Shown here piece by piece: positions 1,080 to 36,511 of a stretch of 64,000 bases of DNA. The notes under the pieces were generated by a model. That model did no database searches, was not told the origin of the DNA, and worked only from the letters and a program-made list of their open reading frames with translations. Position 1 is the stretch's first letter; each line of letters opens with the position of its first letter. The stretch is from positions 124,001 to 188,000 of IMG/VR virus record IMGVR_UViG_3300037502_003770. The stretch is one strand, 5' to 3'. The translations under genes and the position numbers were made by a program.

Positions 1080-2612
1080 ATGGGACAAAACACAAACAAC
1101 ACAGTAGCAAAAGCTACAAGTAATGCAGATGAAACTATTGCTGCATTTCAAAATGAATCAACACCTACTCAAGAAGTAGAAACTACCGAAACTCAAGAGG
1201 TAGAGGAAACTGAAACCAACAGGGATGAGGTTTTAAATGAATTAAAATCTAAGGCAGTTTCTATGCAATCGCACTTAGGTATCAATGCAGAAGAGCAAGA
1301 AATTGTTTCTAACATCATTAACGAAGCTTTCCCTGACCCAACTCAATATGGTTTAAAACAATACCAAGGTGGTAGCGAAGCAGCCAAAAAAGGTGATAAA
1401 GTTGGTTCAATCGCTCTTAGAATGTTAAAAACCACAGGTGAAAATCCTAGGTTTGGTACAAAAGATGCTTATGATGTTGAAACGTTGGCAGAACAAATTT
1501 TAACAATGAAAAGGTTAACCTCACCTATTCATGTTATTGAAAACAATCCAGAAATCACTGGGATTCAAAATCCTGGTTCAAAAGCAATTTATTATATTGT
1601 ACTAGATGGTCACCGCAGAATTAGTGCAATAGAATTATTATTAGCACAAGGTAAAATTGATGCTACTAGTAGTTTAGTAATGAATGTTCCAATTGTTAAA
1701 GTTCCGTTATCGTGGACTAAAGAAAATTGGAGAGAGCGTGTAACTGAATATATGTTAAAACAAAGTGGTTCAGTAAAACCTTTACATTTTGTAGAATTTA
1801 CTAACGCTCTTTTAAAGGTCACAAGATTAGCCAATAAAACAGCTGGCGAATGGTCTAAAACTTTATTAGTACCTATTACCAAAATGAAACAATACTTAGA
1901 TTTAGTTAAGTTTGTTGATTTTACTGGCGATTCTCAAGAAGAAGCACTAGAAATTGAAAAAACTAGAAGTGCATTATTCTTAATCATTCAAGAAAAAGAA
2001 TATACTTTAACTGATGTTTTAAATAAATTAAAAGAATTTAAAACATCTTTCACAAAGGAGAATAACATTGCTCCTGATTTAAATGATATTCTTATCTTCT
2101 TATCTGAAGCAAAAGTATCAAAAAGAGGTCGTATTTCTGAAAAGAATATGACTGAGGCAGAAAAAGAGCAATTTGAAAAAGACCGTTTGGCTAAGGCTCA
2201 GGCTGAAGCTCAAGAGGCTAATGCAAAAGTGGCAGCTTTAAGTGGCAATGCTTCTCAAGCTTCACAAAATTCATTATCAGAAAGTACAAACTCTACTTCT
2301 GAAAATGAAGGTAGTGCTGAAAGTGATGTTGCTCTAACTATGGAACAAAAACATAATAGAGCGAAAATTGAAGGTCGTATGGCATTATTTAGTGAAAATG
2401 CACCTACAATTTTAAACGAGAAATTAAGTCAAAACTTAATTACTCAAGAACAATATGACGCTGCAATTGTTGCACTTAATGTTGTTTCTAATTTGAATAT
2501 ATTAGTAACAACTGTCCTTACAAAAGGTAAGACTTTTGAAGAACAAGTTTTAGATGTTTTAGGAATTACTTTGCCAGTTCAAAGTGATACTGAAAACCCT
2601 GATACTATCTAA
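1080..2612 (+). CDS. ParB/Srx N-terminal (CTPase-like) domain protein with acidic low-complexity ends
   Basis: ENPR, LAEQI...LTSPIHV, YIVLDGHRRISA (ParB GxxR box). Confidence 0.75.
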   Translation: MGQNTNNTVAKATSNADETIAAFQNESTPTQEVETTETQEVEETETNRDEVLNELKSKAVSMQSHLGINAEEQEIVSNIINEAFPDPTQYGLKQYQGGSEAAKKGDKVGSIALRMLKTTGENPRFGTKDAYDVETLAEQILTMKRLTSPIHVIENNPEITGIQNPGSKAIYYIVLDGHRRISAIELLLAQGKIDATSSLVMNVPIVKVPLSWTKENWRERVTEYMLKQSGSVKPLHFVEFTNALLKVTRLANKTAGEWSKTLLVPITKMKQYLDLVKFVDFTGDSQEEALEIEKTRSALFLIIQEKEYTLTDVLNKLKEFKTSFTKENNIAPDLNDILIFLSEAKVSKRGRISEKNMTEAEKEQFEKDRLAKAQAEAQEANAKVAALSGNASQASQNSLSESTNSTSENEGSAESDVALTMEQKHNRAKIEGRMALFSENAPTILNEKLSQNLITQEQYDAAIVALNVVSNLNILVTTVLTKGKTFEEQVLDVLGITLPVQSDTENPDTI

Positions 2613-3019: not shown

Positions 3020-4267
3020 ATGTTAACACAGACCCAATTTGAAGAGCAGTTCAGAAATTTAGTAGCTATCATAGATATAGCAAAAACTAAGTTTCCATCA
3101 TATATTAATAATCCTTTCAAATTAAATATAATTGATGGTTTATTAAGTTTATCTTTTTATAAAATTTCTTTTTCAAAAGAAAAGACAATCACCAAATTTT
3201 CTCAAAAGATAAATAAAACTTTAACAAAAAAAGTTGTTGAAGATACTATTGATGTTATAAAAACTGTTCCTATAAATAGTTTTATTCTTTCAGAAGAATT
3301 TCTTTCTTATTTAGATAATAATCTTTTAATAAAGACTTCTGAAAAAAGTAATAAACTTTACTTTTTTAAATCATTAAATGAAGTAAAGCTTAATGATATT
3401 GATTTTACTTTTGATGGTAAAATTCTTAAAAAGAATAAGACTGGCAGTCTTTCAGAAAGAAACAGAAAACTATTTCTTTTAAATTATTTTTATGCTACAT
3501 CGAGCAATAAAACAATAAATAAAAAATATCTTCTTTCAAAGACAGATATTTCTCATATTGAAAATATTGCTTACAGGAAGTATTTTAAAAACAGAAGTAA
3601 AATTGAAATAGAAGATTTTATTTCTGATACTCAAGTAAGAGTATTTCAATATATTTGTTATTTTGATATAACAAAAGCCAATTTTAAAGCTTTCTTTATT
3701 TTTGTAATGAAAAATATTATTAACAGTAATAATGTTAATGATTATAAGAAAGGGAACTTTAGGCAAGTTTCAATTGAAATAGAAAATGAACAAGGCGATT
3801 TTTCACAAAATACAGCTTTAAATTCTTTATCAAGTGAAACTTTTAATTCTGATTTTGATAGGAATTTTAGTAATTCTTCTCAAAAGAATAAAAGGATGTT
3901 TGATTTAATAATAAATTTACCTTTAAGTAACCAAAGTAGAATTATTCTTAGGTCAATATATAACGTAGCTTTAATTGGTAATACTTCTATTCAACAAGAA
4001 GATAAAAGGAAAAAAAATCAGTTCAAAATATCCGTAATGGATGAGTTAAGAAAAACATTTAGAAAAGATATTAGCGATGATTCATATCGTGTATATCTTA
4101 CTAATATGAATAAATATCTTAAACAAATAGGTATTATTGAACCTGATAAGGAAACCCAACATATTCTAAATGAATATAAAAATGGTGAACTTGATATTAA
4201 GATTGCTTATGAATATATGGAGAACAAAATCAAAAACAGTCTTATTTCAGAACCTTGCATTTCTTAA
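3020..4267 (+). CDS. phage sigma70-like RNA polymerase sigma factor
   Basis: Region-2-like HIENIAYRKY..IEDFISDTQVRVFQYICYFDITKANFKAFFIFVMKNII; region-4-like LPLSNQSRIILRSIY...ISDDSYRVYLTNMNKYLK. Confidence 0.65.
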   Translation: MLTQTQFEEQFRNLVAIIDIAKTKFPSYINNPFKLNIIDGLLSLSFYKISFSKEKTITKFSQKINKTLTKKVVEDTIDVIKTVPINSFILSEEFLSYLDNNLLIKTSEKSNKLYFFKSLNEVKLNDIDFTFDGKILKKNKTGSLSERNRKLFLLNYFYATSSNKTINKKYLLSKTDISHIENIAYRKYFKNRSKIEIEDFISDTQVRVFQYICYFDITKANFKAFFIFVMKNIINSNNVNDYKKGNFRQVSIEIENEQGDFSQNTALNSLSSETFNSDFDRNFSNSSQKNKRMFDLIINLPLSNQSRIILRSIYNVALIGNTSIQQEDKRKKNQFKISVMDELRKTFRKDISDDSYRVYLTNMNKYLKQIGIIEPDKETQHILNEYKNGELDIKIAYEYMENKIKNSLISEPCIS

Positions 4268-18164: not shown

Positions 18165-19410
18165 TAAATTATATAATATTTATATTAATAATTATTTTTT
18201 ACTATTTAATAATATACATTTAAATTAATGAAATTAATTCACAAAGGTTATAAATATAGAATCTACCCAAATAAAGAACAAACTGAATTGTTAAATAAAC
18301 ATTTTGGTTCTTGTAGATTTGTATTTAATTATTTCCTTAATTTAAAAATGAATACCTATAAACAAGAAAAGAAAAATCTAAATAATAATTATCTATCTTC
18401 ATTATTAACCCTTCTTAAAAAAGAACAGAATTATTCTTGGTTAAATGAAATTAATTCTCAAAGTTTGCAAGCTTCTTTAAAAAATGTTGACGTTGCTTAT
18501 GATAGGTTTTTTAAAAAGATAAGTCAATATCCAAAATTTAAAAGTAAAAATGATAAACAAAGTTTTAAAGTACCACAGTTTTTAACTATTGAAAATGATT
18601 TATTATATTTGCCTAAATTTAAGAAAGGAATTAAAATAAATATTCATAGAGATTTTAAAGGAAAGATTTTATATGGAACTGTATCAAAAACACCAACAGG
18701 TAAATATTATGTATCTATCACTTGTAAACAAGAATATATTCCTTTTGAAAAGACAGGTTCTATTATAGGAATTGATACTGGTATTAAAGATTTAGCTATC
18801 CTTTCAGATAAAACTGTTTATGAAAATAAAAAGGTTTTAAAGAAGAGGATAAAGAAAATAAAATATAAACAAAGGCAATTAAGTAAGAAAGTAAAAGGTA
18901 GCAAGAGTAGGATAAAACAAAGGAATAAACTTGCAATAGAACATGAGAAAGTAGTAAATATTAGAAAAGATTATTTACATAAAGTAAGTACAGAAATTAT
19001 CAAAAACCACGATATTATATGTATTGAAGACCTTTCAATAAAAAACATGATGAAGAACCATAAATTAGCGCAAGCATTTTCTGATGCAAGTTTAGGTACA
19101 TTCTATGATATGTTAGAATATAAAGCTTCTTTTAATGAGAAGAAAATTATTAAGATAGGAAGATTTTTTGCAAGTAGTAAAACTTGTTCAAAATGTAATT
19201 ATATTAATGAGGAATTAACATTAAAGGATAGGGAATGGACTTGCAAAGGTTGTGGCACGTTGCATGATAGAGATTATAATGCAAGTATAAATATTAAAAA
19301 CGAAGGTTTAAAGATATTATCTGGTTTGGGTTGCAAGTCGGATATAAAACAAAAAGTGATGGAGGCGTTTCCGTTAGGAGAGTCAATGAAATCATATATT
19401 TAGAAATAAA
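18165..19410 (+). mobile_element. IS200/IS605-family element, solo TnpB (IS1341-like), boundaries approximate
   Basis: TnpB ORF without TnpA, interrupting a promoter-gene-terminator unit. Confidence 0.65.
18228..19403 (+). CDS. tnpB: RNA-guided endonuclease TnpB
   Basis: HTH_OrfB start YKYRIYPNKEQ..FGSCRFVFN; RuvC-I GIDTG, RuvC-II IEDL, zinc finger CSKC/CKGC, RuvC-III HDRDYNASINI. Confidence 0.95.
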   Translation: MKLIHKGYKYRIYPNKEQTELLNKHFGSCRFVFNYFLNLKMNTYKQEKKNLNNNYLSSLLTLLKKEQNYSWLNEINSQSLQASLKNVDVAYDRFFKKISQYPKFKSKNDKQSFKVPQFLTIENDLLYLPKFKKGIKINIHRDFKGKILYGTVSKTPTGKYYVSITCKQEYIPFEKTGSIIGIDTGIKDLAILSDKTVYENKKVLKKRIKKIKYKQRQLSKKVKGSKSRIKQRNKLAIEHEKVVNIRKDYLHKVSTEIIKNHDIICIEDLSIKNMMKNHKLAQAFSDASLGTFYDMLEYKASFNEKKIIKIGRFFASSKTCSKCNYINEELTLKDREWTCKGCGTLHDRDYNASINIKNEGLKILSGLGCKSDIKQKVMEAFPLGESMKSYI

Positions 19411-19812: not shown

Positions 19813-20136
19813 ATGAAAGAAAATCTTATTGAAAAAATATTTTCCCTTGAATGGAAAATACCTAAAAATAATTATGTATATCTTAATAAAGGAAATTTTC
19901 GTTCAAACAAATATTCACTAAATGCAATAAAAATAGAAAATAAAGAAATACTCATACACTATAAAAATAAATATTATGATATATATTTTTATGATGAAGT
20001 AACAACATTAGAAAAAAAGAATGTTCTTAAATCTTTATCTATTTTAGATTTACAATTTATTTTTCTATTTCTAAATTCAGAAAAAAATCAAAAACCTATT
20101 AATATGAAATTAAATTTTGATTCCATACCTAGATAA
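19813..20136 (+). CDS. LLDLQ-family paralogue
   Basis: MKENLIEKIF ... LSILDLQFIF. Confidence 0.8.
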   Translation: MKENLIEKIFSLEWKIPKNNYVYLNKGNFRSNKYSLNAIKIENKEILIHYKNKYYDIYFYDEVTTLEKKNVLKSLSILDLQFIFLFLNSEKNQKPINMKLNFDSIPR

Positions 20137-20147
20137 AATATATTCTT

Positions 20148-20453
20148 ATGAAAGAAAAATTAATTCAAGAAATATTGAATCTTGTTAAAAATACAAGAAA
20201 AGATTTTATTAACGATATTACTAACCCTTTTATCACTAATATCTATTATATAGACCCTGTATATGGCACTCGTAAAATATATTTAATGGATATAGTTGAT
20301 ATAGATATATACCAAATTATTACTGTAAAAAATTTAAATCTAGGTGATGATTATCGTAGTATAATTAATAAAACAGAAATAATAAGAATATTAAACCTTG
20401 TTTCATTATTAGACCTGCAATATATTCTATTATTATTAAAAAAATTTTTATGA
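20148..20453 (+). CDS. LLDLQ-family paralogue
   Basis: MKEKLIQEIL ... VSLLDLQYIL. Confidence 0.8.
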   Translation: MKEKLIQEILNLVKNTRKDFINDITNPFITNIYYIDPVYGTRKIYLMDIVDIDIYQIITVKNLNLGDDYRSIINKTEIIRILNLVSLLDLQYILLLLKKFL

Positions 20454-20752
20454 AAGAAATACTCCTTAAAGAAATAACCTCACTCCTTAAAGAAAAAGAT
20501 TTTACTTTAAAAAGTAACAATTATTATACTATTAATCTAAACCTTAAAAAAATACAAAATAAAGAATATTATTATTTCCTAAGAAATATACATTATAATA
20601 AAAATAATAATTCCTATATTCTAACATACAGTTTTAAAAATCAAACTCATCTAACAGATGATTATATCACACTTAAAAATAAAAATATAACCAAATATAT
20701 AAAACATATTTCCCTTCTTGATTTGCAATTTATAAAATTATCTCTTTTATGA
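20450..20752 (+). CDS. LLDLQ-family paralogue
   Basis: MKEILLKEIT ... ISLLDLQFIK. Confidence 0.8.
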   Translation: MKEILLKEITSLLKEKDFTLKSNNYYTINLNLKKIQNKEYYYFLRNIHYNKNNNSYILTYSFKNQTHLTDDYITLKNKNITKYIKHISLLDLQFIKLSLL

Positions 20753-20982
20753 AAGAAAAACTTATTCAAGAAATAAAAGATATTATTGAAAAATATGACC
20801 TTCATTATATGACAATATATACAGATATATATAAATTATCAAACCATATAAAAACTAATCGTACTCTAATGAAAGAAGTTTTCCTTTCTGATTTAAAAGA
20901 ATTTAACTTACTTGAATTGCAATTTACTTCTATAAAAATAAAAAATGATGCAAATAAACAAAGAAAAAATATCTTTTCTTAA
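20749..20982 (+). CDS. LLDLQ-family paralogue (short insert)
   Basis: MKEKLIQEIK ... FNLLELQFTS. Confidence 0.8.
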   Translation: MKEKLIQEIKDIIEKYDLHYMTIYTDIYKLSNHIKTNRTLMKEVFLSDLKEFNLLELQFTSIKIKNDANKQRKNIFS

Positions 20983-21295
20983 AGAAAAATCTTTACTTAA
21001 ATTTAAAAACCTTTTGGAATCACATAATAATTATGAAAATATCCTTAATTTTAGATATTATGTAAAACAAAAACATGGAGAAATTATAGGATATCCAAAA
21101 CCAATTTTAATAAATAATTATTATACTATACTTGAACTAAGAAAAAAACATTATACCTTATATACCCTACTTTATAAAACCACAAAAGAAAATAAATATA
21201 TATTCAAAGATTATAACCTTAATAAAATTATGAAAATATTTAAAAATATATCACTTCTTGACCTCCAATTTATTCTAATTCATATCAAAAAATAA
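20945..21295 (+). CDS. LLDLQ-family paralogue
   Basis: ISLLDLQFILIHIK. Confidence 0.8.
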   Translation: MMQINKEKISFLKEKSLLKFKNLLESHNNYENILNFRYYVKQKHGEIIGYPKPILINNYYTILELRKKHYTLYTLLYKTTKENKYIFKDYNLNKIMKIFKNISLLDLQFILIHIKK

Positions 21296-21306
21296 AACTT
21301 AATTAT

Positions 21307-21651
21307 ATGGATATATCACTTCTTAAAGAAAACCTTTTTAATCAAATATATAACATACTTGAAAAACAAAAAGAATTAGAATTAACAACACCCAATATTT
21401 ATATAAAATTTTTAGATGCTCATTCTATACATAATAAAAACCTATACCTACTAAAACTAAAATATCTAAATTCAAATAAAAAATATGAACTCCATTATAA
21501 ATATGATTATGATGGTAGTAATTTAAACCATTATAGAGTAAATTATTTAACAATTCAAGGAAAAGATATTTTATTGAAATCTATATCCTTACTTGACTTG
21601 CAATTTATTCTAATTCATATCAAAAACCGCTCACAATCAATTCAAATTTAA
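21307..21651 (+). CDS. LLDLQ-family paralogue
   Basis: LKENLFNQIY ... ISLLDLQFILIHIK. Confidence 0.8.
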   Translation: MDISLLKENLFNQIYNILEKQKELELTTPNIYIKFLDAHSIHNKNLYLLKLKYLNSNKKYELHYKYDYDGSNLNHYRVNYLTIQGKDILLKSISLLDLQFILIHIKNRSQSIQI

Positions 21652-21702
21652 AAAGGATATTCCACTACCAAAATATATTCTTCTCTTAAAATAACCATTT
21701 TT

Positions 21703-21981
21703 ATGAAAGAAAAAGATTTTATTAAAGAAAAACTCTTTAAACAAATAAAATACTATATTAAAAAATATCAACTTTGTTATATCCCATACACAGGTATTAA
21801 TGATTTACATAATATAAATAAAAACTCACCAACATATAAAATGTTTATTCATAATATAAATGAACTCCTTTCAAAAATAAAAACATTCCCACTATCAGAT
21901 TTAATCTTTCTAAAAAACCAAATTAAAAATGATGCACTCAAAAATAAAACAAAAACTAATAAATCAAATTCTTTCACCTAA
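21703..21981 (+). CDS. LLDLQ-family paralogue
   Basis: IKEKLFKQIK ... FPLSDLIFLK. Confidence 0.75.
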   Translation: MKEKDFIKEKLFKQIKYYIKKYQLCYIPYTGINDLHNINKNSPTYKMFIHNINELLSKIKTFPLSDLIFLKNQIKNDALKNKTKTNKSNSFT

Positions 21982-22345
21982 TAATAATCTAGTTGATAAT
22001 AAACATAATGTAGTAATAAGATATACCTCCGTTAATAACCCTAAACTCTATAATATAAAATTCTTTAATAAAGAAAAAACAACACATTACTCACTAAATG
22101 AACTCTCAATTAATAAACTCTTTATTAATACAAAAAAAATTAAAAGACATATAATAATTTATCAAAATAATTACCACCTTAAACCAATAACAATATCTCA
22201 TAAAAAATATATACACTCTTACCTAAACCTTATCCCACTACTTGACCTGCTCTTTATTAAAAATCTAATAATAAAAGAAAATAATAGAATAAAAAATTCT
22301 ATATTAAGAAATACTTTACTACTAGATAAACTTAAAAATGAATAA
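21929..22345 (+). CDS. LLDLQ-family paralogue
   Basis: IKQKLINQIL ... IPLLDLLFIK. Confidence 0.75.
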   Translation: MMHSKIKQKLINQILSPNNNLVDNKHNVVIRYTSVNNPKLYNIKFFNKEKTTHYSLNELSINKLFINTKKIKRHIIIYQNNYHLKPITISHKKYIHSYLNLIPLLDLLFIKNLIIKENNRIKNSILRNTLLLDKLKNE

Positions 22346-22595
22346 AATAACCTTTATTAAAAATACTCTTATTAAAGATATAAATAATTATAAAAATAAA
22401 TCACTTTCTCTTAATATAGAAAATTGTACATTTAAAATAAATAATACCTTATATAAATTAGAATTTTTTCAATATGGTGAAATATGTTATAGTACAAATG
22501 GTTGCTATACTTTCTTAAAAGATGATATTTTTTTATCTAAAATATCTTTACTCGACTTGCAATATATCCTTTTAAAAATGAAATCTTCTTTATGA
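22338..22595 (+). CDS. LLDLQ-family paralogue
   Basis: IKNTLIKDIN ... ISLLDLQYIL. Confidence 0.8.
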   Translation: MNKITFIKNTLIKDINNYKNKSLSLNIENCTFKINNTLYKLEFFQYGEICYSTNGCYTFLKDDIFLSKISLLDLQYILLKMKSSL

Positions 22596-22825
22596 AAGAA
22601 AAACTTGCCCTAAATATCCTACATACTATAAATCATTATAACCTTTTAAATAAAAAAATCCTTTATAATAATTTAATTTATGATTTTAAATCTTTTTATA
22701 CCATACTAGATTTTCAAGACCTACCCTTACTTGAACTACAATATTTGAAAATATTCCTTAAAACGATTGCAACCTATGGAAAAAATTACTCTTATTGGAA
22801 AAATTCTATCCCTTCTGAAAAATAA
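22592..22825 (+). CDS. LLDLQ-family paralogue (short insert)
   Basis: MKEKLALNIL ... LPLLELQYLK. Confidence 0.75.
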   Translation: MKEKLALNILHTINHYNLLNKKILYNNLIYDFKSFYTILDFQDLPLLELQYLKIFLKTIATYGKNYSYWKNSIPSEK

Positions 22826-23078
22826 AAACTTCTCACTAATAAAAAATAATAACCTAAAATTTATTTTAACTAATCAATATAATGGCTCATTATATTTCAT
22901 CTCTTATAATAATGTAAACAGTTATTATTATATACATTATTTTTACAATAATGACACCCATTTAACTACTGACTCTATTACAGAAAAAGAACTTTATTCA
23001 TACCTACTCTCTATGAATCTACTTGATATTCTCTTTATAAAATCTTATCTTATTAAAAATTCTATATATTACAGTTAG
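22767..23078 (+). CDS. LLDLQ-family paralogue (ATG at 22776 likely)
   Basis: EKITLIGKIL ... MNLLDILFIK. Confidence 0.75.
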   Translation: MQPMEKITLIGKILSLLKNKNFSLIKNNNLKFILTNQYNGSLYFISYNNVNSYYYIHYFYNNDTHLTTDSITEKELYSYLLSMNLLDILFIKSYLIKNSIYYS

Positions 23079-23083
23079 TAACC

Positions 23084-24035
23084 TAAAACATTTATAACAT
23101 TCTTTTAAATAAAACAATGTTTCCAAAACATAAATAGTTAAATATCAAAGAGTTATGAAAAATAATGGTATGTAATAATCACAAAGATTGTTTATTGAAA
23201 AGAATGTTTATACAAAACATTCTTTACTTAATAAAAAGAATCTTCTTAATAAAAACATTGTTCCTGATGAAAACATTGTTTTTTTTTAACAGCACTTTTT
23301 TTTAATAAAACATTCTTTCTAATAAAAACATTCTTCCCTTATATATTACATACATTGTATATAAAACATTGTTCTTAATAAGTAATATATTCTATTACAA
23401 TTACTTATATATAATAAAATAAACTTTTCTTGAATAAAAAGTTGTTTTTATATAGTACTTTTTTTATTGAAACCTATTTTTTCTATAGCACTTTTTTTCT
23501 TTTATATTATAGTTTTTATCTAAAAAAGGTTATTTTACTTGAAAACCTAATTTTTTCTACAGTACTTTTTCTTTAAAGAAGATACTTTTTTAATAAAAGT
23601 TGTTTTTTTCTATAGTACTTTTTTTCTTTTAAAAAAGATTATTTTACTTGAAAACCTAATTTTTTCTATAGTACTTTTTTTCTTTAAGTAAGGTTATTTC
23701 TTTCAGAAGGGAAGCTGTTTATCCCCTCGCCCATCGAGACACTCTAATTTTTTGAAATAAGTTTTCTTAAAGAAGACTTTTTTTCAAAAAACATATATTT
23801 CTTTAAGAAAACTTATTTTTTTATACAGCACTTTTTTTCAGAAAGTAAGTTTTTTATACAGCACTTTTTTTCTAAAACATATTCTTTTTTAAAGGGATAA
23901 ATTTTTCTTAGTAATTATTTCTTTTACAAAGGTAAAACTTTTTTCTTTAAAAACAAAATATTTCTTTAAAGTTTTATTTTTTCCTACAGCACTTTTTTTC
24001 TAAAAGTAAGTTTTTTTCTATAGTACTTTTTTTCT
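23084..24035 (+). repeat. non-coding iteron-like array
   Basis: About 9 AAA(C/G)A(T/A)T(G/C)TT boxes (23084-23375) and 10 A(C/T)AG(C/T)ACTTTTT boxes (23289, 23452, 23485, 23559, 23612, 23668, 23825, 23858, 23986, 24020); ~55 bp duplication 23522/23631. Confidence 0.8.
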
Positions 24036-29570: not shown

Positions 29571-31461
29571 GTACCAACTTAACCCAAGATTAGATAGCTG
29601 CCAACTTAATGCAGTTAATACAGTTGCTCAAGCTACTGAAAATGAAGTTGTAAAAGTTGAGGCTGTTGCTGGTTCAGGCAAAACTACTACAATCATTGAA
29701 TCTATTAAGGAACTTGTAAATAGGGACTTAATACAATACAATAATAATGTATTGGTTCAGTTTAATAAAAATATTGCAACTGAAACAAAAGAGAAAATTA
29801 TGTTCAATAAATTAGATAAGTTTATTGATTGCAGAACTATTCATTCTGTATTTTTTCCTGCATTAAATGTAGTAAAAAAGTTCTTTGGAAAATTGCAAGT
29901 TAAATTAGTTGAGGATAATTTTAAAGCTACCTCAATTGTGAATAAGTATGTAGATGCTTATTGTGAAAATAATAATATTGATTCAGAAAAATCAATTGAA
30001 TTATTTAATCTTTCTGATATGTCAAGATTATTCGATTTAATCCGTTTATTTGCAATTACTGATTATTCAGATGTGGATGCAATTAACGAAATAATAGAAC
30101 GTTACAGTTTAAATATTTCACCGATTGCATTACAATTAATGCAAAATATCTTTGAACTGCAATATCCAAGTAGATATAAAGATATTGAAGTATTTACTAG
30201 TGGTGCTTTTAAATATAGTTTCTATTCACGTTCTGATAAAAAAACTGTAACCGTTTTTGAAAAGAACTTAAATAATAATATTCCTTATATGTATTTTGAT
30301 TTTACCGATATGCTTTATATTGCATATAAGTATTATTCAAGCTTACAAAACGAGCTACCTAGTTTTGAATACATATTTATAGATGAGGCTCAAGACTTAT
30401 CTAAATTGGATTATTGTTTAATTCAATTGATTAAACAAAAAAATTCAAAACTTATTTATGTTGGAGACCACCTGCAAGCTATTAATATGTTTAAAGGTGC
30501 TTTACCTGAATTGTATAAAAATTTCGATGCTACATACAATTGTGAATTAAATTACAATTACCGTAGTGGTTCCGAAATAATTCAGTATGTAAATGAAAAT
30601 ACAGTATGTAAAAATATTGTAAGTGGTTTAAATACTCAAGGTATAATTAATACCGATTATTTAACTACTTCTGAAAATAAAAACAAACTAATATCTTTTG
30701 TAAATGAATTAAAATCATTTTCCGAAGATAAAAGTAATAAAGAAAAACATTTAATACTTTCTGAAAAAAACGATATTTTAATTTCGTTGTATATTCAGTT
30801 AGCAAAAAATAATGTTTCTGATATTACTTTAAAAGGTGTAGCCGAATTATTAACAAGTTACAATACTTGTTTAAACTTTCAGAATGATAAAATGAAAGTA
30901 AAAGCAGTTAAAGATACTGATTCAATCGATACCGTTTTAAATGCAATACAATTGCAATTAAATATGAAAAGAAAAACTTTGCAGTCTTTGTATAATTTCG
31001 ATAATGAAAACGATTATCTAAAAGATACTGATTACTTCAATTTTAGTATCATTGAATATTTAGTAAAAGAACTTACTTCAATGAAGGAATATAATTCTGT
31101 AAAAGAATTAAGTTTGCAAGTAAATAAAATATTGAATAGTTATGATAGTGGTAAGCTTAGTAATAAAATTACCCTAATGACTGTTCATAAAGCCAAAGGT
31201 TTAGAAAGTGATATTGTAACTATCGTTAATTCAGATTTTAAACCTAAAGAAAAATTAAATAAAAATACAGGCAAACCTTATCCAATACCTAACTGGTTAG
31301 TTGAACAGTTTGAAAATTTAAAATATGTTGCTTTTACTCGTGCAGTAAAACAATTAAATATTTTAACATTGCCACAAACTGAAAATGAAAAAACAGGTTT
31401 TAAAAATAGTGGTAGGATGTATAAGGAAAATAACAAAGGTCAAACAGTAAGGAATTTTTAA
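29566..31461 (+). CDS. UvrD/Rep-like superfamily 1 helicase
   Basis: AVAGSGKTT, FNKNIA, RTIHS, DFTDML, FIDEAQD, VGDHLQAI, NYRS, TVHKAKGLE, YVAFTRA. Confidence 0.92.
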   Translation: MKYQLNPRLDSCQLNAVNTVAQATENEVVKVEAVAGSGKTTTIIESIKELVNRDLIQYNNNVLVQFNKNIATETKEKIMFNKLDKFIDCRTIHSVFFPALNVVKKFFGKLQVKLVEDNFKATSIVNKYVDAYCENNNIDSEKSIELFNLSDMSRLFDLIRLFAITDYSDVDAINEIIERYSLNISPIALQLMQNIFELQYPSRYKDIEVFTSGAFKYSFYSRSDKKTVTVFEKNLNNNIPYMYFDFTDMLYIAYKYYSSLQNELPSFEYIFIDEAQDLSKLDYCLIQLIKQKNSKLIYVGDHLQAINMFKGALPELYKNFDATYNCELNYNYRSGSEIIQYVNENTVCKNIVSGLNTQGIINTDYLTTSENKNKLISFVNELKSFSEDKSNKEKHLILSEKNDILISLYIQLAKNNVSDITLKGVAELLTSYNTCLNFQNDKMKVKAVKDTDSIDTVLNAIQLQLNMKRKTLQSLYNFDNENDYLKDTDYFNFSIIEYLVKELTSMKEYNSVKELSLQVNKILNSYDSGKLSNKITLMTVHKAKGLESDIVTIVNSDFKPKEKLNKNTGKPYPIPNWLVEQFENLKYVAFTRAVKQLNILTLPQTENEKTGFKNSGRMYKENNKGQTVRNF

Positions 31462-31938
31462 AATATCCTTACCTCAATATAAAACCTATCTTTTTTAAAG
31501 ATAGGTTTTTTTATATCCTTACTTTATCCTGATACCTACCTTAGTTCTCTATATAGTCTTATTAACGTTTTAAAGCCTCGTTAAGCTACTCTAAATACTA
31601 AATGATAGTTTGATACCTTTATACTATCCTGATGCCTTAAAGATACCTTTATGTAAGGAATAGAACTACCTACCTAGATAACCTTACTTAGTTGTGAAGT
31701 AGTAACCCTATATAAATAGCTTTATTTCTTTAAGTAAAGCAGTTTTAAAGGTTCCTGATTAGTGGTAAAGTAATTTACTATTAAAATAGCTTAGGTTCGC
31801 TTAGAGAGGCTTTATATAGGTTCCTGATACCCTAGAAAAAAAGTTTACTGAAAATTTGGATATATGAAAATAAAGTATTAACTTTGCAGTAGTTAAAGCA
31901 ATCAAGCTTTAATCATAACCAATAAACCTGATTCCCTT

Positions 31939-32124
31939 ATGAAAAATTTAATCTATGTAACTAATTTCCTGATAGGTGCTTTAACCTTATTATTACCTAT
32001 TACTTTATATCGTTTTGGTTTAGGAAATAATAATGCAATAATAGTAACTATTTTCTTACTGATTGAATTATTCTTATTAGTAAGATTAAATATTATATTC
32101 AGAAAATTAAATACAACTAAATAA
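31939..32124 (+). CDS. small two-TM membrane protein
   Basis: Hydrophobic 61 aa ORF after a promoter. Confidence 0.7.
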   Translation: MKNLIYVTNFLIGALTLLLPITLYRFGLGNNNAIIVTIFLLIELFLLVRLNIIFRKLNTTK

Positions 32125-32154
32125 ACCTATTCACTTAAAAACAATTTAATCCTT

Positions 32155-32325
32155 ATGGAAAAGACTTTCAGAAAATCAATTGCCTTAATAATTGATTCAT
32201 TATTGTATTTAATACTTTTATTAGTATTGAATTATTCAATTGAAAACATATTTCTTTTAATAGGAAGTGTTTTATTAGGAACATATATATATTTAATTCA
32301 TATAATTAAAAAATATCCTGATTGA
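32155..32325 (+). CDS. small two-TM membrane protein (56 aa, not in track)
   Basis: MEKTFRKSIALIIDSLLYLILLLVLNY...IKKYPD*. Confidence 0.6.
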   Translation: MEKTFRKSIALIIDSLLYLILLLVLNYSIENIFLLIGSVLLGTYIYLIHIIKKYPD

Positions 32326-32357
32326 ACGATGTCGCAAATAGTATTCTCATATATGGG

Positions 32358-32373
32358 AGTTCCACGTGGAACA
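32358..32373. promoter_or_regulatory. parS-like centromere site
   Basis: AGTTCCACGTGGAACA: perfect 14 bp palindrome, 15/16 match to the chromosomal parS form TGTTCCACGTGGAACA. Confidence 0.7.
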
Positions 32374-32376
32374 GTA

Positions 32377-32437
32377 GGGGTGGGGGTGGGTATCCCCTAG
32401 GGGGAGGGGAGGGGAGGTGGGGAGGACAGGGGTGGGG
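32377..32437 (+). other. G-rich tract with G-quadruplex potential
   Basis: Nine runs of 3 or more G in 61 nt, in an otherwise very AT-rich genome. Confidence 0.75.
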
Positions 32438-32483
32438 ACTACATCGAAACATTTTTTCCAAAAAAACAGAATTTTTCTAAGGA

Positions 32484-32624
32484 ACTTTTTTTTAAAGAAA
32501 ATAACCCTTTCTTAAAGGAAGAAATTGATTTACAGATACTTATGTTTTATTTAAAAGACTTTTTTTTAAAGAAAATAAGCTTTCTTTAAGAAAGAAATTG
32601 ATTTAGAGATAGTTATGTTTTATT
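32484..32624 (+). repeat. tandem imperfect repeat, period 74 bp, 2 copies
   Basis: ACTTTTTTTTAAAGAAAATAA...AAGAAATTGATTTA.AGATA.TTATGTTTTATT twice. Confidence 0.8.
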
Positions 32625-32836
32625 CTAAATAAATCTTTTTCAGAAGGTTATAAAATTTTAAGAAAACAGAATTTTTCTAAAGTACTTTTTCTTTACAAGA
32701 ATATTCTTTATGTGTAGATTTTCTAATAGGGGAAGGGGGGGGGTATTTTTATGAGTGGTCAATAAAATTTTTTTGTGGAAAAATTATGATTTTATAAAGA
32801 GAGCTATTTATTTAGAAAGGCGAATAATATTTAAAG

Positions 32837-34345
32837 ATGAGAGATATTAAGAACATTGATAAGCTGAGTGATAATAATCATAAGATAGATATTTTATCTT
32901 TAAATAAATTTTTAATTGAGAGGGGAGATAATTTTTTAGAAACTATTATTACAAACAATTATACCTTTATTAAGAGGGAAGATATTACAAAAGAATTTTT
33001 TCAATTAAATTATAAAAAGATTTTTCATGGTGAAAGTATTGATGATTTGGATTTTCTTGGTAAAGATTTTCCTATTGAGTGGTATAATGTGGATATTTTT
33101 AAATATATTCTTGATACATATTTTATTTTATTTCCAGCTTTTAAAACAATAAAATTATTTCCAAAGGAGATATTCTATATTTATAATTATTGCGAATTAT
33201 TTATTAAATATAATACAGTATTTTTAGAATATATACCAAAAGATATTGAGAATTATTATGAACTTGTTAAACAAGCTTTTATCAAATATGATGAGATAAT
33301 ATGGAAAAATTGGTTTCCAAAGGAATATATTCCTCAATTAAGAAAAGACTTTCCTGATAATTTAACTGTTAAAGCTTATATTCAATTAAAAAATTTATCA
33401 GAAAATAAAAATTCTTTATTAAGGGAAGATTATCGTTATGTATTAACTAATAGTGATGTATATCTTACTAAGAAGATAGAAGCTGTAAGTGATAAAAATA
33501 AGTTTGATGCTATTGCTTTTGATAAGTATTTACTTTCTTTTGGAAATAATGATTTACACAAGATATTATTTAATAAAAGGTATATTATTCCTAGTAAGGA
33601 GAGATTTCAAAAAAATTACATGAATATTTTAAGAAAGAATAATACTGTTAAAAATATTCATGGTTATGATGATGAGAAATATGGTTATTTAAGTTCTTTA
33701 ATACCTAAAGAGTATTATACTAAAGAAATGGTAGATAAGATAGTTGAACATTTTGGTTTATTTACTGTGGTAAAAAAGAGTCTAATAAATCAAAATGTTG
33801 ATGGGTTTGCTAATTTGGTTAAGGAGTATATTACGAATAGGGCTGTTTATTCAATACTTGCCAACATTAATCCTTATATTGAGGGTTATTATGATTTATT
33901 TAAATATGCAATTGAGAAAAATCCTTTTTCGATTAAATATTTAAATACTGAATTTGATAGGTATGAAGAGCTTGCTTTATTTGCTGTTTCTATTAGTGCT
34001 GGTGTCTTATTTTATATACCAGAATATAAAAGAAGTTATTATGTTTGTTTAAAAGCTGTTTCTGAAAATGGTTTTTTAATAAAAAGAGTACCAGAAGATG
34101 TTGAAAACTATTATTCTTTAGTAAAAGTTGCTTATTTACAGAATAAAGATAGTATTAATGAAATTAATTTAAATCCTTATTATATTGATATGTTAAAAAA
34201 GGATTTTCCTGAAGACGAGGAGCTTCAAAAAAAGAAAGGTTTTGATGATGTATTTGATGACCCTTATAATTTTCTTAAAGAACATATTTCAAAACAGGTA
34301 AGAAAGTTATTAAAAGAAGCTATTTATAAGAAAGGAAATTTTTAA
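32837..34345 (+). CDS. two-module DUF4116-like repeat protein with L-x-E linker and C-terminal tag; putative internal head protein
   Basis: KIDILSLNKFLIERGD start, (I/V)PxD(I/V)ENYY repeats, linker LSENKNSLLRE, tail LKEHISKQVRKLLKE. Confidence 0.7.
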   Translation: MRDIKNIDKLSDNNHKIDILSLNKFLIERGDNFLETIITNNYTFIKREDITKEFFQLNYKKIFHGESIDDLDFLGKDFPIEWYNVDIFKYILDTYFILFPAFKTIKLFPKEIFYIYNYCELFIKYNTVFLEYIPKDIENYYELVKQAFIKYDEIIWKNWFPKEYIPQLRKDFPDNLTVKAYIQLKNLSENKNSLLREDYRYVLTNSDVYLTKKIEAVSDKNKFDAIAFDKYLLSFGNNDLHKILFNKRYIIPSKERFQKNYMNILRKNNTVKNIHGYDDEKYGYLSSLIPKEYYTKEMVDKIVEHFGLFTVVKKSLINQNVDGFANLVKEYITNRAVYSILANINPYIEGYYDLFKYAIEKNPFSIKYLNTEFDRYEELALFAVSISAGVLFYIPEYKRSYYVCLKAVSENGFLIKRVPEDVENYYSLVKVAYLQNKDSINEINLNPYYIDMLKKDFPEDEELQKKKGFDDVFDDPYNFLKEHISKQVRKLLKEAIYKKGNF

Positions 34346-34944
34346 TGAAGAATTTTAATAAATTAAATGATACTAAACATGAGATAGATTTAATTTCTTT
34401 AAGTGATTTTTTACTTGAGAAGGATGATGATTATTTAGATAAGTTTATAAAAAAAGAATTTAAAAAACCTGAAGATATAACAGAGACATATCTTAAATTA
34501 TGGTATAAGTATATATTTAATATAGATAGTTATTTTGGTGTATCATACACTGAGTTTGATTTTACTGGTGATGATTTTCCTATTGAGTGGTATATGGATG
34601 CAAAATTTTTAGATACTTTATTTGAAGAATCTGGTATTAAGTTTTTAATGTGTGTACCAAAAGTATTAAGATATGATTATGAAGTTTGTGAACGTTCTAT
34701 TAATAAAAACCCTATTTCTTTAAAGTATGTCCCAAAAGATATTGAGAATTATTATGGTTTAGTAAAGCTTGCTTTTAAGAAAAAACAAAATTTAATTGGA
34801 CAAAAATGGTTTCCAAAGGAATATATTCCTCAATTAAAGAATGATTTGGATGATGAATTATCTCAACATTATTTAAATCTTCAGGAGCATATTTCAAAAG
34901 AAGTGAGGAAACTTTTAAAAGAATACTATTTAAAGAAAATATAG
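34345..34944 (+). CDS. DUF4116-like repeat protein with C-terminal tag
   Basis: EIDLISLSDFLLEKDD ... LQEHISKEVRKLLKE. Confidence 0.7.
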   Translation: MKNFNKLNDTKHEIDLISLSDFLLEKDDDYLDKFIKKEFKKPEDITETYLKLWYKYIFNIDSYFGVSYTEFDFTGDDFPIEWYMDAKFLDTLFEESGIKFLMCVPKVLRYDYEVCERSINKNPISLKYVPKDIENYYGLVKLAFKKKQNLIGQKWFPKEYIPQLKNDLDDELSQHYLNLQEHISKEVRKLLKEYYLKKI

Positions 34945-34948
34945 TTAG

Positions 34949-36511
34949 ATGGGATTAGTGTATAATAATAAGAGGATTAAAAAAGATATAAGTGATATTC
35001 ACAATATTGATATTATTTCTTTAAATAAATTTCTTCTTGATAAGGGTGATAAATTTTTTGGAAAGTTATTATATTACAATTGGTGTTTACTTCCTGATAA
35101 GGAGACTTTTCAAAAGAATTGGATGTATTATATTGAAAAGTACGATAAATACAATGAAGATGGTTTTGGTAAAAAATCAAATTTAATACCAAAAGAATAT
35201 TATACAAAAGAGATAATTAATTCTATATTAAAAACTGATTTTGATAGTAATCATAGTTTTACTTTAATTAATCAATATGCTGATGGTTTTGCTGAAAGTG
35301 TTAAGGGTTATTTATTAGATAGAGTTATGTATACAAATTTGTTATATTTTATTAAATCTGATATACCTGGTTATTTTGAGTTATGTAAATCTTTAATAAA
35401 AAAGAACCCATCATATATTGACTATGTACCTAAGACTTATGATAATCAAAAATTAGTTGAGCTTTGTGCGTTAGCTGTTTCTATTGATGGTATGATTTTA
35501 AGATATGTTAGAGATAAAATTGATTTATTTTCAAATCCAAATGTTATATATACGGCAATTAAAAATAATACAATAGCTTTAAGATTTGTACCTACTAGTA
35601 TAGAAAATTATTATTCTTTTCTTAAAACAGCTTATACATTAAATAAAAGAATAATTTCAATAGATAGTGCAAAAGAATATCTTGATGATTTAAAAAGAGA
35701 TTTTCCTGAAGATATAGATTTTATTGAGAAGCGAATTAATCTTCAAGAAAATAAATCTTTATTAAAGGAAGAGAATTTTAATGAGGAGTCTTTTGTTTTT
35801 ACTTCAGATAGACATAAGATAGATATTAAATCTTTAAGCAATTTCTTAATTGAGAAGGGTGACAGGGTTTTAGATACATTATTATATGCTCGTGGTTATA
35901 AGGAAATAGATTATTATTCAGATTTTTTTAGGGAAGAGATTATAAAATATGTTAATTCTGATATTATTAAAAAGATTCCAAAAGAATTGTGGGATGATTA
36001 TTCTTTTTGTTTAACAGTTTCTTCAAGAAATGGTTATTATGCAATTGATTTTATTAATGAAGATTTTTTAAATGATTATAATATTGTAAAAAATCTTTTA
36101 ACTCAACAAGGTGAATTAATAAATAAAGTTAATCCTGATATTTTGGATGAGAAATTAATTAGATTAGCGAATAAAACAAATACTAGTGGAAAAGATTTAA
36201 CTGATACTTGTTATTTTTGGGAACATTATGATGGGAGGTATGAATTATTAAAGAAAATTATTTCTGTATACCCTGATAAAATAAGGTTTATTAGACCTAG
36301 TGATAGTAGATTTGCTGTTGATAAAAAATATTATGAATTATTAAAAATAGCTTACTTAAAGAATAAGAATATTTTAAGATATAAAGATATTAAATACAAG
36401 TATACACCTTATTATGAAAAATTAAAAAATGAGTTTGGTATTAAATTTTATTTAAAAGAGTATATTTCAAAACAGGTAAGAAAGTTATTAAAAGAAAAAA
36501 TCTCCTTATAA
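34949..36511 (+). CDS. two-module DUF4116-like repeat protein
   Basis: Two ID.xSL..FL..KGD starts, linker LQENKSLLKEE, tail LKEYISKQVRKLLKE. Confidence 0.7.
   Translation: MGLVYNNKRIKKDISDIHNIDIISLNKFLLDKGDKFFGKLLYYNWCLLPDKETFQKNWMYYIEKYDKYNEDGFGKKSNLIPKEYYTKEIINSILKTDFDSNHSFTLINQYADGFAESVKGYLLDRVMYTNLLYFIKSDIPGYFELCKSLIKKNPSYIDYVPKTYDNQKLVELCALAVSIDGMILRYVRDKIDLFSNPNVIYTAIKNNTIALRFVPTSIENYYSFLKTAYTLNKRIISIDSAKEYLDDLKRDFPEDIDFIEKRINLQENKSLLKEENFNEESFVFTSDRHKIDIKSLSNFLIEKGDRVLDTLLYARGYKEIDYYSDFFREEIIKYVNSDIIKKIPKELWDDYSFCLTVSSRNGYYAIDFINEDFLNDYNIVKNLLTQQGELINKVNPDILDEKLIRLANKTNTSGKDLTDTCYFWEHYDGRYELLKKIISVYPDKIRFIRPSDSRFAVDKKYYELLKIAYLKNKNILRYKDIKYKYTPYYEKLKNEFGIKFYLKEYISKQVRKLLKEKISL

What the first reader, a model, noticed from the sequence alone, without database searches (positions are those of the whole stretch)
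32358..32373. Bacterial chromosomal parS site in a phage genome
AGTTCCACGTGGAACA is a 15/16 match to the palindromic chromosomal parS and is GC-rich against the background. It lies in non-coding DNA at the early/late boundary near the inferred origin, as parS does on chromosomes. Inference: the phage recruits host ParB/SMC, or its own ParB-like protein, to position or segregate its DNA.
Basis: partly seen in the sequence, partly recalled or inferred. Interest (0 to 1): 0.75.

Follow-up and report, generated by a model that had tools for sequence, protein, structure and literature searches.

The report
Conserved parS-like palindrome in jumbo phage
A very AT-rich 312-kb phage carries one conserved copy of the bacterial centromere sequence parS, fused to a G-quadruplex-prone tract at the junction of its small-gene and structural-gene blocks, and also encodes a divergent ParB-like protein, so a ParB-type DNA clamp probably loads there, though binding has not been tested.

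Summary
AGTTCCACGTGGAACA lies at 32358-32373 and occurs once in the window. About 1e-4 such matches are expected per 64 kb. It matches 15 of 16 bases of TGTTCCACGTGGAACA, an established parS.

The site is not an isolated motif. It forms the 5' edge of a conserved non-coding block (about 32314-32483), and its 3' flank is the only G-rich, quadruplex-prone tract in the 64 kb. Iteron-like AT-rich repeats follow, then a second conserved block (32692-32822), then the first gene of the structural cluster.

A relative from another sample is 100% identical over 147 nt across the site. In a more distant relative, the 55 nt up to the contig end inside the palindrome are 98% identical, next to a coding region at 54-76%.

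ORF 1080-2612 is a divergent, solitary ParB-like protein. The hits are all sub-threshold but convergent. No ParA and no canonical ParB were found in the window. Promoter motifs hint at a Bacteroidota host.

Best reading (0.45): a loading site for a ParB-family clamp, either host ParB or the phage protein. Rivals are an origin or packaging element, an unrelated operator, and a small ORF. Binding is untested. Contig ends cluster at the block in four assemblies, which is unresolved.

The parts
32358..32373 (.). parS-like 16-mer AGTTCCACGTGGAACA (perfect 14-bp palindrome at 32359-32372)
   Evidence: Identical in L123. The left 11 nt are present at the end of contig L132.
32314..32483 (+). Conserved non-coding block A, from the stop codon of the 56-aa ORF through the palindrome and the G tract to ...ACATTTTTTCCAAAAAAACAGAATTTTTCTAA
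   Evidence: A 147-nt perfect run (32334-32480) against L123 is the longest in 3.5 kb. The 55 nt at 32314-32368 are 98% identical to L132, against 54-76% in the adjacent ORF. The 3' end, GGGTGGGGACTACATCG..ACATTTTTTCCAAA, is kept in L128.
32374..32442 (+). G-rich tract with eight runs of at least 4 G. It holds the only canonical quadruplex motif in the window (32400-32437) and the palindrome CCCCTAGGGG (32394-32403).
   Evidence: G4Hunter peaks at 2.96. The quadruplex motif is retained in L123 and, with diverged sequence, in L128.
32462..32679 (+). AT-rich repeat zone: AAAACAGAATTTTTCTAA twice (32462, 32662) bracketing two 73-bp tandem units (32487-32632), each with a CTTTCTT(N)AAGAAAG inverted repeat
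   Evidence: Copy number and spacing differ in L123 and L128, but the motif CTTTCTTnAAGrrAAG is kept.
32692..32822 (+). Conserved block B with GGGGAAGGGGGGGGG (32729-32743), directly upstream of the first gene of the rightward cluster
   Evidence: A 131-nt perfect run against L123. The core TAATAGGGGAAGnGGGGGGGTnTTTTTATGAGTGGTCAATAAAATTTTTTT is kept in L128. It is single copy in IMG/VR.
1080..2612 (+). Solitary divergent ParB-like protein (P0017, 510 aa): ENPR ... LDGHRRISAIELL N-terminal domain followed by an HTH-like region
   Evidence: Homologues P0018 (72%) and P0019 (44%) occur in the same samples as the two relatives that keep the palindrome.
32155..32325 (+). 56-aa hydrophobic ORF ending 33 nt before the palindrome. 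It is the last gene of the leftward small-gene block.
   Evidence: It is present in L123, L132, L203 and L204.
32837..34345 (+). DUF4116 protein, the first gene of the cluster that runs on to baseplate-like and terminase genes
31855..31886 (+). Host-type promoter match TTTG-N20-TAACTTTG upstream of the small ORFs. No such motif lies between the island and the DUF4116 gene.

Best explanation
The palindrome is a functional protein-binding site of the parS type, that is, a nucleation site for a ParB-family HTH clamp.

Setting (shown): the phage is a 312-kb, 23% GC jumbo phage from subsurface water. Promoter motifs suggest a Bacteroidota host. It keeps a single copy of the site at the junction between its small-gene/replication block and its structural block.

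Who binds (inferred): a dimer of either the host's chromosomal ParB or the phage's own solitary ParB-like protein (ORF 1080-2612). The host protein fits better, because the site is a canonical chromosomal parS.

What it does (inferred): with no ParA partner, the likely outcome is not classical ParA-driven partition. More likely it marks or organises the phage DNA in cis. This could be ParB spreading with SMC loading or positioning. It could also be KorB-like long-range control or insulation of the adjacent late cluster.

The abutting quadruplex-prone G tract is a second, co-selected part of the same element. It may act as a one-sided barrier or as an R-loop/quadruplex structure. That role is speculative.

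Shown here: the sequence, its rarity, its single-copy status, its conservation, its context, and the ParB-like gene. Inferred: who binds and what follows.
For: 1. The match is 15/16 to an established parS, with a perfect 14/14 core. About 1e-4 such matches are expected per window. The same 16-mer sits upstream of canonical parB (three copies, L126) and parA (L127) in metagenome contigs, and it is the P. aeruginosa parS.

2. If the site were an unrelated operator or cut site, any of 16,384 possible 14-bp palindromes would serve, so identity to the parS core would be a coincidence.

3. In IMG/VR, 54 of 119 distinct hits to the 14-mer core carry the extra T..A flanks, against 8 expected (p = 3e-31). 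Most such cores in viral contigs are therefore selected as full parS sites. Some sit in replication modules with no ParB nearby (L050).

4. Conservation: the site lies in the longest perfect run against L123. Against L132 the region is 98% identical next to coding sequence at 54-76%. A contig from a third sample (X2) covers 32239-32492 with 3 substitutions.

5. The phage lineage encodes a ParB-like protein with an HTH:
- Atlas feature score 0.94 and structural TM 0.5-0.6, measured on the matched cluster models, to ParB_N/HTH_ParB clusters.
- The ENPR...DGHRR motif.
- GmrSD_N, which I place in the ParB clan from my own knowledge, at E = 0.025.
- HTH_ParB at 0.022 in P0019.
- PHROG 'ParB-like partition protein' at 1.4e-4.
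- TIGR00180 at 0.004 and 0.016.
- hhalign places DGHRR on GERR and the HTH in the right order.
- Homologues co-occur with the palindrome in all three lineages.

6. Bacteroidota-style promoters. Bacteroidales in PMC10197239 have ParABS and consensus-type parS.
Against: - No binding test was possible. The DNA-protein complex job was not folded.
- Conservation covers the whole 170-nt block, so it does not single out the palindrome.
- There is no sequence variation within the palindrome among the three relatives, so its own constraint cannot be measured.
- Position 1 is A rather than T.
- Only one site was found, and there is no ParA.
- P0017 lacks GERR, the LG(R/K)GL motif and any above-threshold ParB hit. 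Its gene lies 30 kb away with no site nearby.
- The host is only inferred.
- The remaining 248 kb of the genome were not examined.
- The G tract, the repeats and the contig-end clustering have no established place in ParB biology.
Confidence: 0.45

Rival explanations
1. The island is a replication-origin or packaging/terminus element (ori, pac or cos-like). The palindrome would be recognised or cut by a phage initiator or terminase. The G tract would form a quadruplex or R-loop, and the AT-rich repeats would serve as iterons or TerS sites. The likeness to parS would be coincidental.
For: - The architecture fits: a unique GC-rich block, then repeats with variable copy number and inverted repeats, then a second conserved block.
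- GC skew steps up at about 32 kb.
- Four contigs from independent assemblies end or start within about 100 nt of the island: L132, L203, L204 and L128.
- Run X3 has zero depth at 32316-32703.
- The palindrome centre is 18 bp from the midpoint of the source contig.
- The element is single copy in the 312-kb contig.
Against: - The contig ends are spread over 22 nt (window 32347, 32350, 32369), not at one position. This fits sequencing dropout in G runs.
- Two assemblies and a Logan contig read straight through.
- TerL is 30 kb away.
- The cumulative skew minimum is at about 24 kb.
- This reading gives no reason for an exact parS core.
- A self-complementary cohesive end would be unusual.
Confidence: 0.25
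2. The palindrome is an operator, insulator or terminator-like site for a phage transcription factor unrelated to ParB. It would separate early from late transcription, with the G tract stalling RNA polymerase.
For: - The site lies between the last small ORF and the late cluster.
- There is no host-type promoter between the island and the DUF4116 gene, whereas host-type promoters precede the upstream genes.
- The phage encodes a sigma-like protein.
- Block B, next to the gene start, is equally conserved.
Against: - Identity to the parS core would be a coincidence of about 1 in 1e3-1e4.
- No intrinsic terminator is predicted at the site.
- RNA folding of the block is no better than shuffles on either strand.
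Confidence: 0.17
3. The block encodes a small Gly/Trp-rich peptide (TTG ORF 32322-32480, 52 aa). The palindrome would simply be codons for SSTWNS.
For: - The frame is open.
- By hand translation of the aligned sequences, the single substitution against L123 and L132 (C to T at 32333) is synonymous in that frame.
- By the same hand translation, L128 keeps the frame open to a nearby stop, with CGA to CGT silent and N to D.
Against: - The only start is a TTG directly after an in-frame stop.
- GGG-rich glycine codons are out of keeping with a 23% GC genome.
- Nucleotide identity of 98-100%, beside coding regions at 54-95%, points to selection on the DNA or RNA itself.
Confidence: 0.06
4. The site is a chance match or a sequencing/assembly artefact (poly-G).
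For: G-run-rich sequence is typical of two-colour chemistry artefacts, and contigs break here.
Against: - The same sequence appears in independent samples and assemblers.
- The chance expectation is about 1e-4.
Confidence: 0.03

Closest known systems
Chromosomal ParABS centromere parS (TGTTNCACGTGAAACA family; TGTTCCACGTGGAACA in Pseudomonas and Bdellovibrio)
   Same: The 14-bp core is identical and the full site matches 15/16. It is palindromic, non-coding and conserved. A ParB-fold HTH protein is encoded by the same genome.
   Different: The site is on a phage with structural and terminase genes, not a chromosome. It is a single site, not a cluster. No ParA was found and the ParB-like protein has no ParA-binding motif. 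That protein is far from canonical (DGHRR instead of GERR). The origin was not located. The site is fused to a G-quadruplex-prone tract.
KorB-OB of IncP plasmid RK2 and Noc-NBS of Bacillus (ParB-family clamps used for regulation or positioning, not ParA-driven transport; from my own knowledge)
   Same: A ParB-fold HTH protein acts at a palindromic site. The site sits upstream of an operon rather than beside its own gene.
   Different: The site sequence is chromosomal parS, not OB (TTTAGCSGCTAAA) or NBS. No KorA-like partner is known here. Nucleotide binding by P0017 is unknown.
Prophage-plasmid partition systems (P1, N15, mycobacteriophage parABS)
   Same: A phage-borne centromere with a phage-encoded ParB-family protein.
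   Different: Those systems have parA-parB operons with their own, non-chromosomal parS sites next to the genes. Here the ParB-like gene is solitary and 30 kb away, and no sign of lysogeny was seen in the window.
G-rich origin or packaging signals (mitochondrial CSB II and ColE1 R-loop origins; herpesvirus pac1 G/C runs; from my own knowledge)
   Same: A unique run of G tracts on one strand, next to T/A runs, in a cis-acting non-coding block.
   Different: No priming transcript, initiator or terminus has been shown here. None of those elements includes a parS palindrome.

Membership tests
chromosomal-type parS | 16-bp inverted repeat matching TGTTNCACGTGAAACA / TGTTCCACGTGGAACA | tested here: met
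   15/16 and 14/16; the 14-bp core is perfect. The reference 16-mer was seen beside parB and parA in L126 and L127 and in the literature.
chromosomal-type parS | Specific binding by a ParB HTH dimer (CTP-dependent clamp loading) | not testable with these tools
   The complex job with DNA was not folded. No experimental data exist.
chromosomal-type parS | A cognate ParB is available (same replicon or host) | tested here: inconclusive
   A divergent ParB-like ORF lies at 1080-2612, with sub-threshold but convergent hits. The host is inferred as Bacteroidota only from promoter motifs and TnpB relatives. The other 248 kb of the genome were not examined.
ParABS partition system | A ParA ATPase partner and the ParA-interaction motif LG(R/K)GL in ParB | tested here: not met
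   No ParA/CbiA-type family appears among the 25 of 27 Pfam families listed for the 74 window ORFs; the two unlisted families have weaker E-values. The motif is absent from P0017. This holds within the window only.
ParABS partition system | parS sites clustered near the replication origin | tested here: not met
   One site in 64 kb. The origin was not located, and the skew minimum is at about 24 kb.
ParB-CTPase fold protein (for ORF 1080-2612) | Box I / Box II (GERRxR) / Box III nucleotide-binding motifs and a Pfam ParB_N hit above threshold | tested here: not met
   No Pfam hit at the gathering score. The protein has DGHRR in place of GERR. Only weak hits to families of the ParB clan were found.
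ParB-CTPase fold protein (for ORF 1080-2612) | ParB/Srx-like N-terminal domain followed by a ParB-type HTH, by fold | tested here: inconclusive
   The Atlas model gives TM 0.5-0.6, measured on the matched cluster models, to ParB clusters over residues about 98-354. My AlphaFold2 model had pLDDT 43 and was unusable.
G-quadruplex-forming element | At least four runs of at least 3 G with short loops; high G4Hunter score; motif kept across relatives | tested here: met
   The motif at 32400-32437 is the only one in 64 kb, with a peak score of 2.96. It is retained in L123 and in the diverged L128. Whether it actually folds is not testable here.
cos/pac terminus | Virion DNA ends at a fixed position (pile-up of read starts) | not testable with these tools
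   Only contigs could be laid, and no pile-up was reported. Contig ends cluster at the island but are spread over 22 nt.

The most novel reading that the evidence does not exclude
A jumbo phage lineage may use a host-type parS as the loading site for a ParB-family sliding clamp, either host ParB or a solitary phage ParB-like protein. The abutting G-quadruplex tract would act as a built-in one-sided barrier. ParB spreading would then cover only one flank, giving a clamp-based switch or insulator between the early and late gene blocks.

More broadly, host-type parS sites, often with G-run partners and often without a nearby parB, may be a widespread and undescribed feature of phage genomes. In IMG/VR, 54 of 119 core matches are full 16-mers, and G runs are about 3-fold enriched beside them.
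Probability: 0.15. Interest if true: 0.8.

Novelty: new variant of a known kind. Interest (0 to 1): 0.58.

Why it matters
If a ParB-family clamp really loads here, a virus would be borrowing, or copying with its own divergent protein, the bacterial centromere code. This would occur in a genome that shows no ParA and no plasmid-style partition operon within the window.

That would extend ParB/parS biology from chromosome and plasmid segregation to phage genome organisation or gene timing. It would also give solitary phage ParB-like proteins, so far uncharacterised (PMC10286716, PMC12704722), a testable DNA target.

The IMG/VR census done here hints that host-type parS sites are common in viral contigs, which could be tested at scale.

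The tight pairing with the only quadruplex-prone tract in 64 kb, preserved as G runs despite sequence drift, is a separate and easily tested oddity.

Tried and rejected
- **Known phage relatives.** There is no nucleotide relative in INPHARED phages.
- **Known RNAs.** There is no Rfam family and no tRNA in the window.
- **Structured RNA.** The block folds no better than shuffles on either strand (z = +0.8 and -0.2).
- **Intrinsic terminator at the site.** None is predicted; the only one is at 31481-31509.
- **Metagenome protein scan with the DUF4116 protein.** It found nothing.
- **Metagenome DNA-pattern scan.** It found only two unrelated high-GC bacterial parS loci.
- **IMG/VR scans for the island and block B.** They found only the source contig.
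- **Second palindrome GCTAGAATTCTAGC (2794).** It lies inside a 66-aa ORF and is not conserved in L133, so it was dropped.
- **Ankyrin-repeat hits of P0017.** These are spurious.
- **AlphaFold2 model of P0017.** The pLDDT was 43, so no fold search was run.
- **Complex prediction with DNA.** The job was not folded and gave no verdict, so it is no evidence either way.
- **'Two laps of two strains in one contig' as the cause of the midpoint coincidence.** This is not supported: the homologue P0018 is on other contigs, and no second DUF4116 or helicase copy from the 312-kb contig was seen.
- **ECF-type GGAAC promoter reading.** By eye, there is no matching -10 element on either side (sequence).
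- **ParB half-site heptamers.** GTTTCAC occurs 5 times against about 3 expected by my own hand estimate, so it is not enriched.
- **Further relatives through the 56-aa ORF.** The two contigs found stop 21-24 nt before the palindrome.

Full report
**What is there.** The window is the central 64 kb of IMGVR_UViG_3300037502_003770, a 312,694-bp viral contig from a subsurface metagenome. Window position equals contig position minus 124,000. The window is 23% GC. It carries a T4-type large terminase, a baseplate-hub-like gene and many orphan ORFs, so it is a jumbo phage with no close relative in INPHARED.

AGTTCCACGTGGAACA is at 32358-32373. It is the only site in the window within 3 mismatches of TGTTCCACGTGGAACA. 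The inner 14 bp are a perfect palindrome. Under a first-order Markov model, 5e-5 to 1e-4 matches with at most one mismatch are expected per 64 kb. About 0.03 GC-containing perfect 14-bp palindromes are expected.

**Is the reference sequence really a parS?** Yes. A search for the site plus its 3' flank in metagenome contigs returned two unrelated high-GC bacterial loci. One has three copies of TGTTCCACGTGGAACA upstream of a canonical ParB (LGRGL, NPYQSR, GERRFRAS). The other has one copy upstream of a ParA. The same 16-mer is the P. aeruginosa parS in PMC4368675 and related papers.

**The site is part of a larger element.** Directly 3' of the palindrome lies the only G-rich stretch in the window, at 32374-32442, with eight runs of at least four G. 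It contains the only canonical quadruplex motif in 64 kb (32400-32437, G4Hunter peak 2.96).

Downstream come several further features:
- AT-rich direct repeats: two 73-bp units, each with a CTTTCTTnAAGAAAG inverted repeat, bracketed by two copies of AAAACAGAATTTTTCTAA.
- A second G run at 32729-32743.
- The first gene of the rightward cluster, a DUF4116 protein at 32837.

Upstream are a UvrD-type helicase and two small hydrophobic ORFs.

**It is not an artefact.** An independent Logan contig from the source run spans 31833-33340 with no differences. A contig from a different aquatic sample (X2) covers 32239-32492 with 3 substitutions.

**Relatives.** Protein searches with the flanking genes gave three related lineages.

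- *L123* is a 27.6-kb contig from another sample. It is syntenic, with the helicase at 57% and the DUF4116 protein at 89% amino-acid identity. Its alignment to the window has its longest perfect run (147 nt, 32334-32480) across the palindrome and G tract. The second longest (131 nt, 32692-32822) covers block B. The repeats between them carry indels, and the coding flank is about 95% identical.
- *L132 and L128* come from a more distant phage in a single sample; its helicase is 60% identical. L132 ends inside the palindrome (...GGGAGTTCCACGTGG). Its last 55 nt are 98% identical to the window, although the adjacent 56-aa ORF is only 54-76% identical. L128 begins in the G tract. There the sequence has drifted but is still a quadruplex motif, whereas GGGTGGGGACTACATCG..ACATTTTTTCCAAA and the core of block B are kept.

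The block is therefore under selection at the nucleotide level, and the G tract is selected for its G runs. The limitation is that the palindrome shows no variation at all among the available relatives. Its conservation cannot be separated from that of the roughly 170-nt block.

**A ParB in the phage?** My first motif search and the Pfam/PHROG scans found no ParB or ParA in the window.
- Language-model features (score 0.94) and the Atlas structure (TM 0.5-0.6, measured on the matched cluster models, over residues about 98-354) point to ParB_N/HTH_ParB clusters.
- It carries ENPR and, 55 residues later, YYIVLDGHRRISAIELL, a ParB/Srx-type box.
- Pfam gives GmrSD_N at E = 0.025. I place that family in the ParB clan from my own knowledge.
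- Its 44% homologue P0019 hits HTH_ParB (0.022) and PHROG 'ParB-like partition protein' (1.4e-4).
- TIGR00180 is matched sub-threshold in the N-domain (P0019) and in the HTH part (P0018).
- hhalign against the canonical ParB of L126 places DGHRR on GERR and the HTH in the right order, with P = 0.07.

The family is tiny: two homologues among 1.8 billion representatives. Those homologues occur in the same samples as the two relatives that keep the palindrome. I accept 'divergent ParB-like HTH protein' at roughly 80%. It lacks GERR and the ParA-binding motif, has no parS-like site near its own gene, and is solitary. My AlphaFold2 model was too poor to use.

**Host.** Matches to TTTG-N19-21-TAnnTTTG number eight, against three expected. 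They sit upstream of + strand genes at 24166, 25808, 29485 and 31855. From my own knowledge this is the Bacteroidota promoter style.

The window's TnpB has its best relatives (68-70%) on short MAG contigs. Three of the top five are labelled Bacteroidales, Flavobacteriales or Sphingobacteriales, and the other two Sedimentibacter and Acholeplasmataceae. This is a weak hint of a Bacteroidota host. Bacteroidales genomes in PMC10197239 have ParABS and consensus-type parS.

- Among 119 distinct sites, 54 carry the extra T..A that completes the 16-mer, against 8 expected from composition (p = 3e-31). Most such cores in viral contigs are therefore selected as full parS sites.
- A quick phmmer search with one canonical ParB found a neighbour in only 2 of the 54. 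This test is insensitive.
- One AT-rich example (L050) has two full sites flanking an 89-aa ORF next to a 5'-3' exonuclease gene, with no ParB family nearby.
- G-run tracts lie within about 100 nt of these sites about three times more often than at control positions: 14% against 4.6%. The excess holds when sites are split into intergenic and open-frame classes. Some of the contigs are related to one another, so this is suggestive only.

**Weighing the readings.**
- *For an unrelated operator, cut site or origin element,* any 14-bp palindrome would do. Identity to the parS core would then be a coincidence of about 1 in 1e3-1e4.
- *For a ParB-family site,* identity to the parS core is expected. 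A ParB-like gene is present, and the IMG/VR census shows that such sites are selected in viral contigs. I therefore put 'ParB-family loading site' first, at 0.45.
- *Host or phage protein:* a canonical chromosomal parS argues somewhat for host ParB as the binder. The co-conserved phage protein is the alternative.
- *Consequence:* without ParA, I favour marking or organising the DNA in cis, or KorB-like control of the adjacent late cluster, over classical partition. This step is inference only.

**The main rival (0.25)** is an origin or packaging/end element. Four contigs from independent assemblies end or start within about 100 nt of the island. Run X3 has no depth there. The palindrome centre is 18 bp from the midpoint of the source contig. 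That would follow if the original assembly broke here and the circularised contig was later rotated by half its length.

Several points argue against this rival:
- The contig ends are spread over 22 nt.
- Two assemblies read straight through.
- TerL is 30 kb away.
- G-run dropout explains the breaks.

**Minor rivals.** These are an unrelated operator or insulator (0.17), a 52-aa Gly/Trp-rich ORF (0.06) and an artefact (0.03). The ORF reading is disfavoured by its TTG-only start, its GGG codons in a 23% GC genome and its nucleotide-level conservation.

**Verdict.** The likeness to parS is real, rare and conserved, and the ParB-like gene is plausible. Binding, SMC recruitment, segregation and origin proximity are all untested. 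The element is larger and stranger than a bare parS.

I rate it a new variant of a known kind, with interest 0.58. The decisive tests are binding assays and read-level end mapping.

Noticed in passing
window 32340-32445; L132 end, L203 end, L204 end, L128 start: Contigs from four independent assemblies stop or start at the island, at positions equivalent to window 32369, 32347 and 32350, and inside the G tract. The cause could be G-run sequencing dropout or a physical DNA end.
   Followed up: partly
window 32365 (contig position 156,365 of 312,694): The palindrome centre lies 18 bp from the exact midpoint of the source contig. One possible cause is an assembly that broke here, was circularised and was then rotated by half its length. 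This is unexplained.
   Followed up: partly
IMG/VR loci L003-L122: Of 119 distinct GTTCCACGTGGAAC sites in viral contigs, 54 are full TGTTCCACGTGGAACA 16-mers, against 8 expected. Few have a detectable ParB nearby. G-run tracts are about 3-fold enriched within about 100 nt (for example L055, L066, L065).
   Followed up: partly
L050:1506-1816: A 31% GC viral contig has two full parS 16-mers 297 bp apart. They flank an 89-aa ORF beside a 5'-3' exonuclease gene, and no ParB family was found in the seven neighbouring ORFs.
   Followed up: partly
window 24166, 25808, 29485, 31855 (+); 23927, 24040 (-): Promoter-like matches to TTTG-N19-21-TAnnTTTG share a longer consensus (TTTGGnnnTATnAAAA...TTAnCTTTG). 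This is the Bacteroidota promoter style and hints at the host. There is a divergent pair near 24 kb, where cumulative GC skew is lowest.
   Followed up: partly
window 18228-19403: An IS605-family TnpB (OrfB_IS605, Cas12f-like TNB, HTH) sits inside the small-gene block. Its best relatives (68-70%) are on short MAG contigs labelled Bacteroidales, Flavobacteriales, Sphingobacteriales, Sedimentibacter and Acholeplasmataceae.
   Followed up: partly
window 20000-24000: GC skew is strongly negative (-0.25 to -0.47) although the listed ORFs are on the + strand. This is unlike the rest of the window.
   Followed up: no
window 29381, 29449, 31750, 31819; also 31463, 31513, 31678: The repeated motifs GGTTCCTGATAC and ATATCCTTAC lie in the non-coding stretches before the helicase and the small ORFs. 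A Logan contig shows a similar element upstream of 29600. They are probably phage promoter or regulatory repeats.
   Followed up: no
window 29600-33340 (run X1): Assembler word depth drops from about 43 (29600-31751) to about 20-24 (31833 onward). A two-variant bubble sits at 31730-31848. This suggests co-occurring strains that share the left flank.
   Followed up: no
window 32837-36511 and elsewhere: DUF4116 repeats occur in 8 of the 74 ORFs scanned, including three adjacent paralogues just right of the island. Relatives carry similar arrays (L123, L129).
   Followed up: no
window 3020-4267: A 415-aa protein has weak Sigma70 region 2 and PHROG sigma-factor hits. It is conserved next to the ParB-like gene in L201, L202 and L133.
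   Followed up: no
window 32322-32480: A 52-aa TTG-start ORF rich in Gly and Trp spans the palindrome and G tract, and stays open in the relatives. It is probably not coding.
   Followed up: partly
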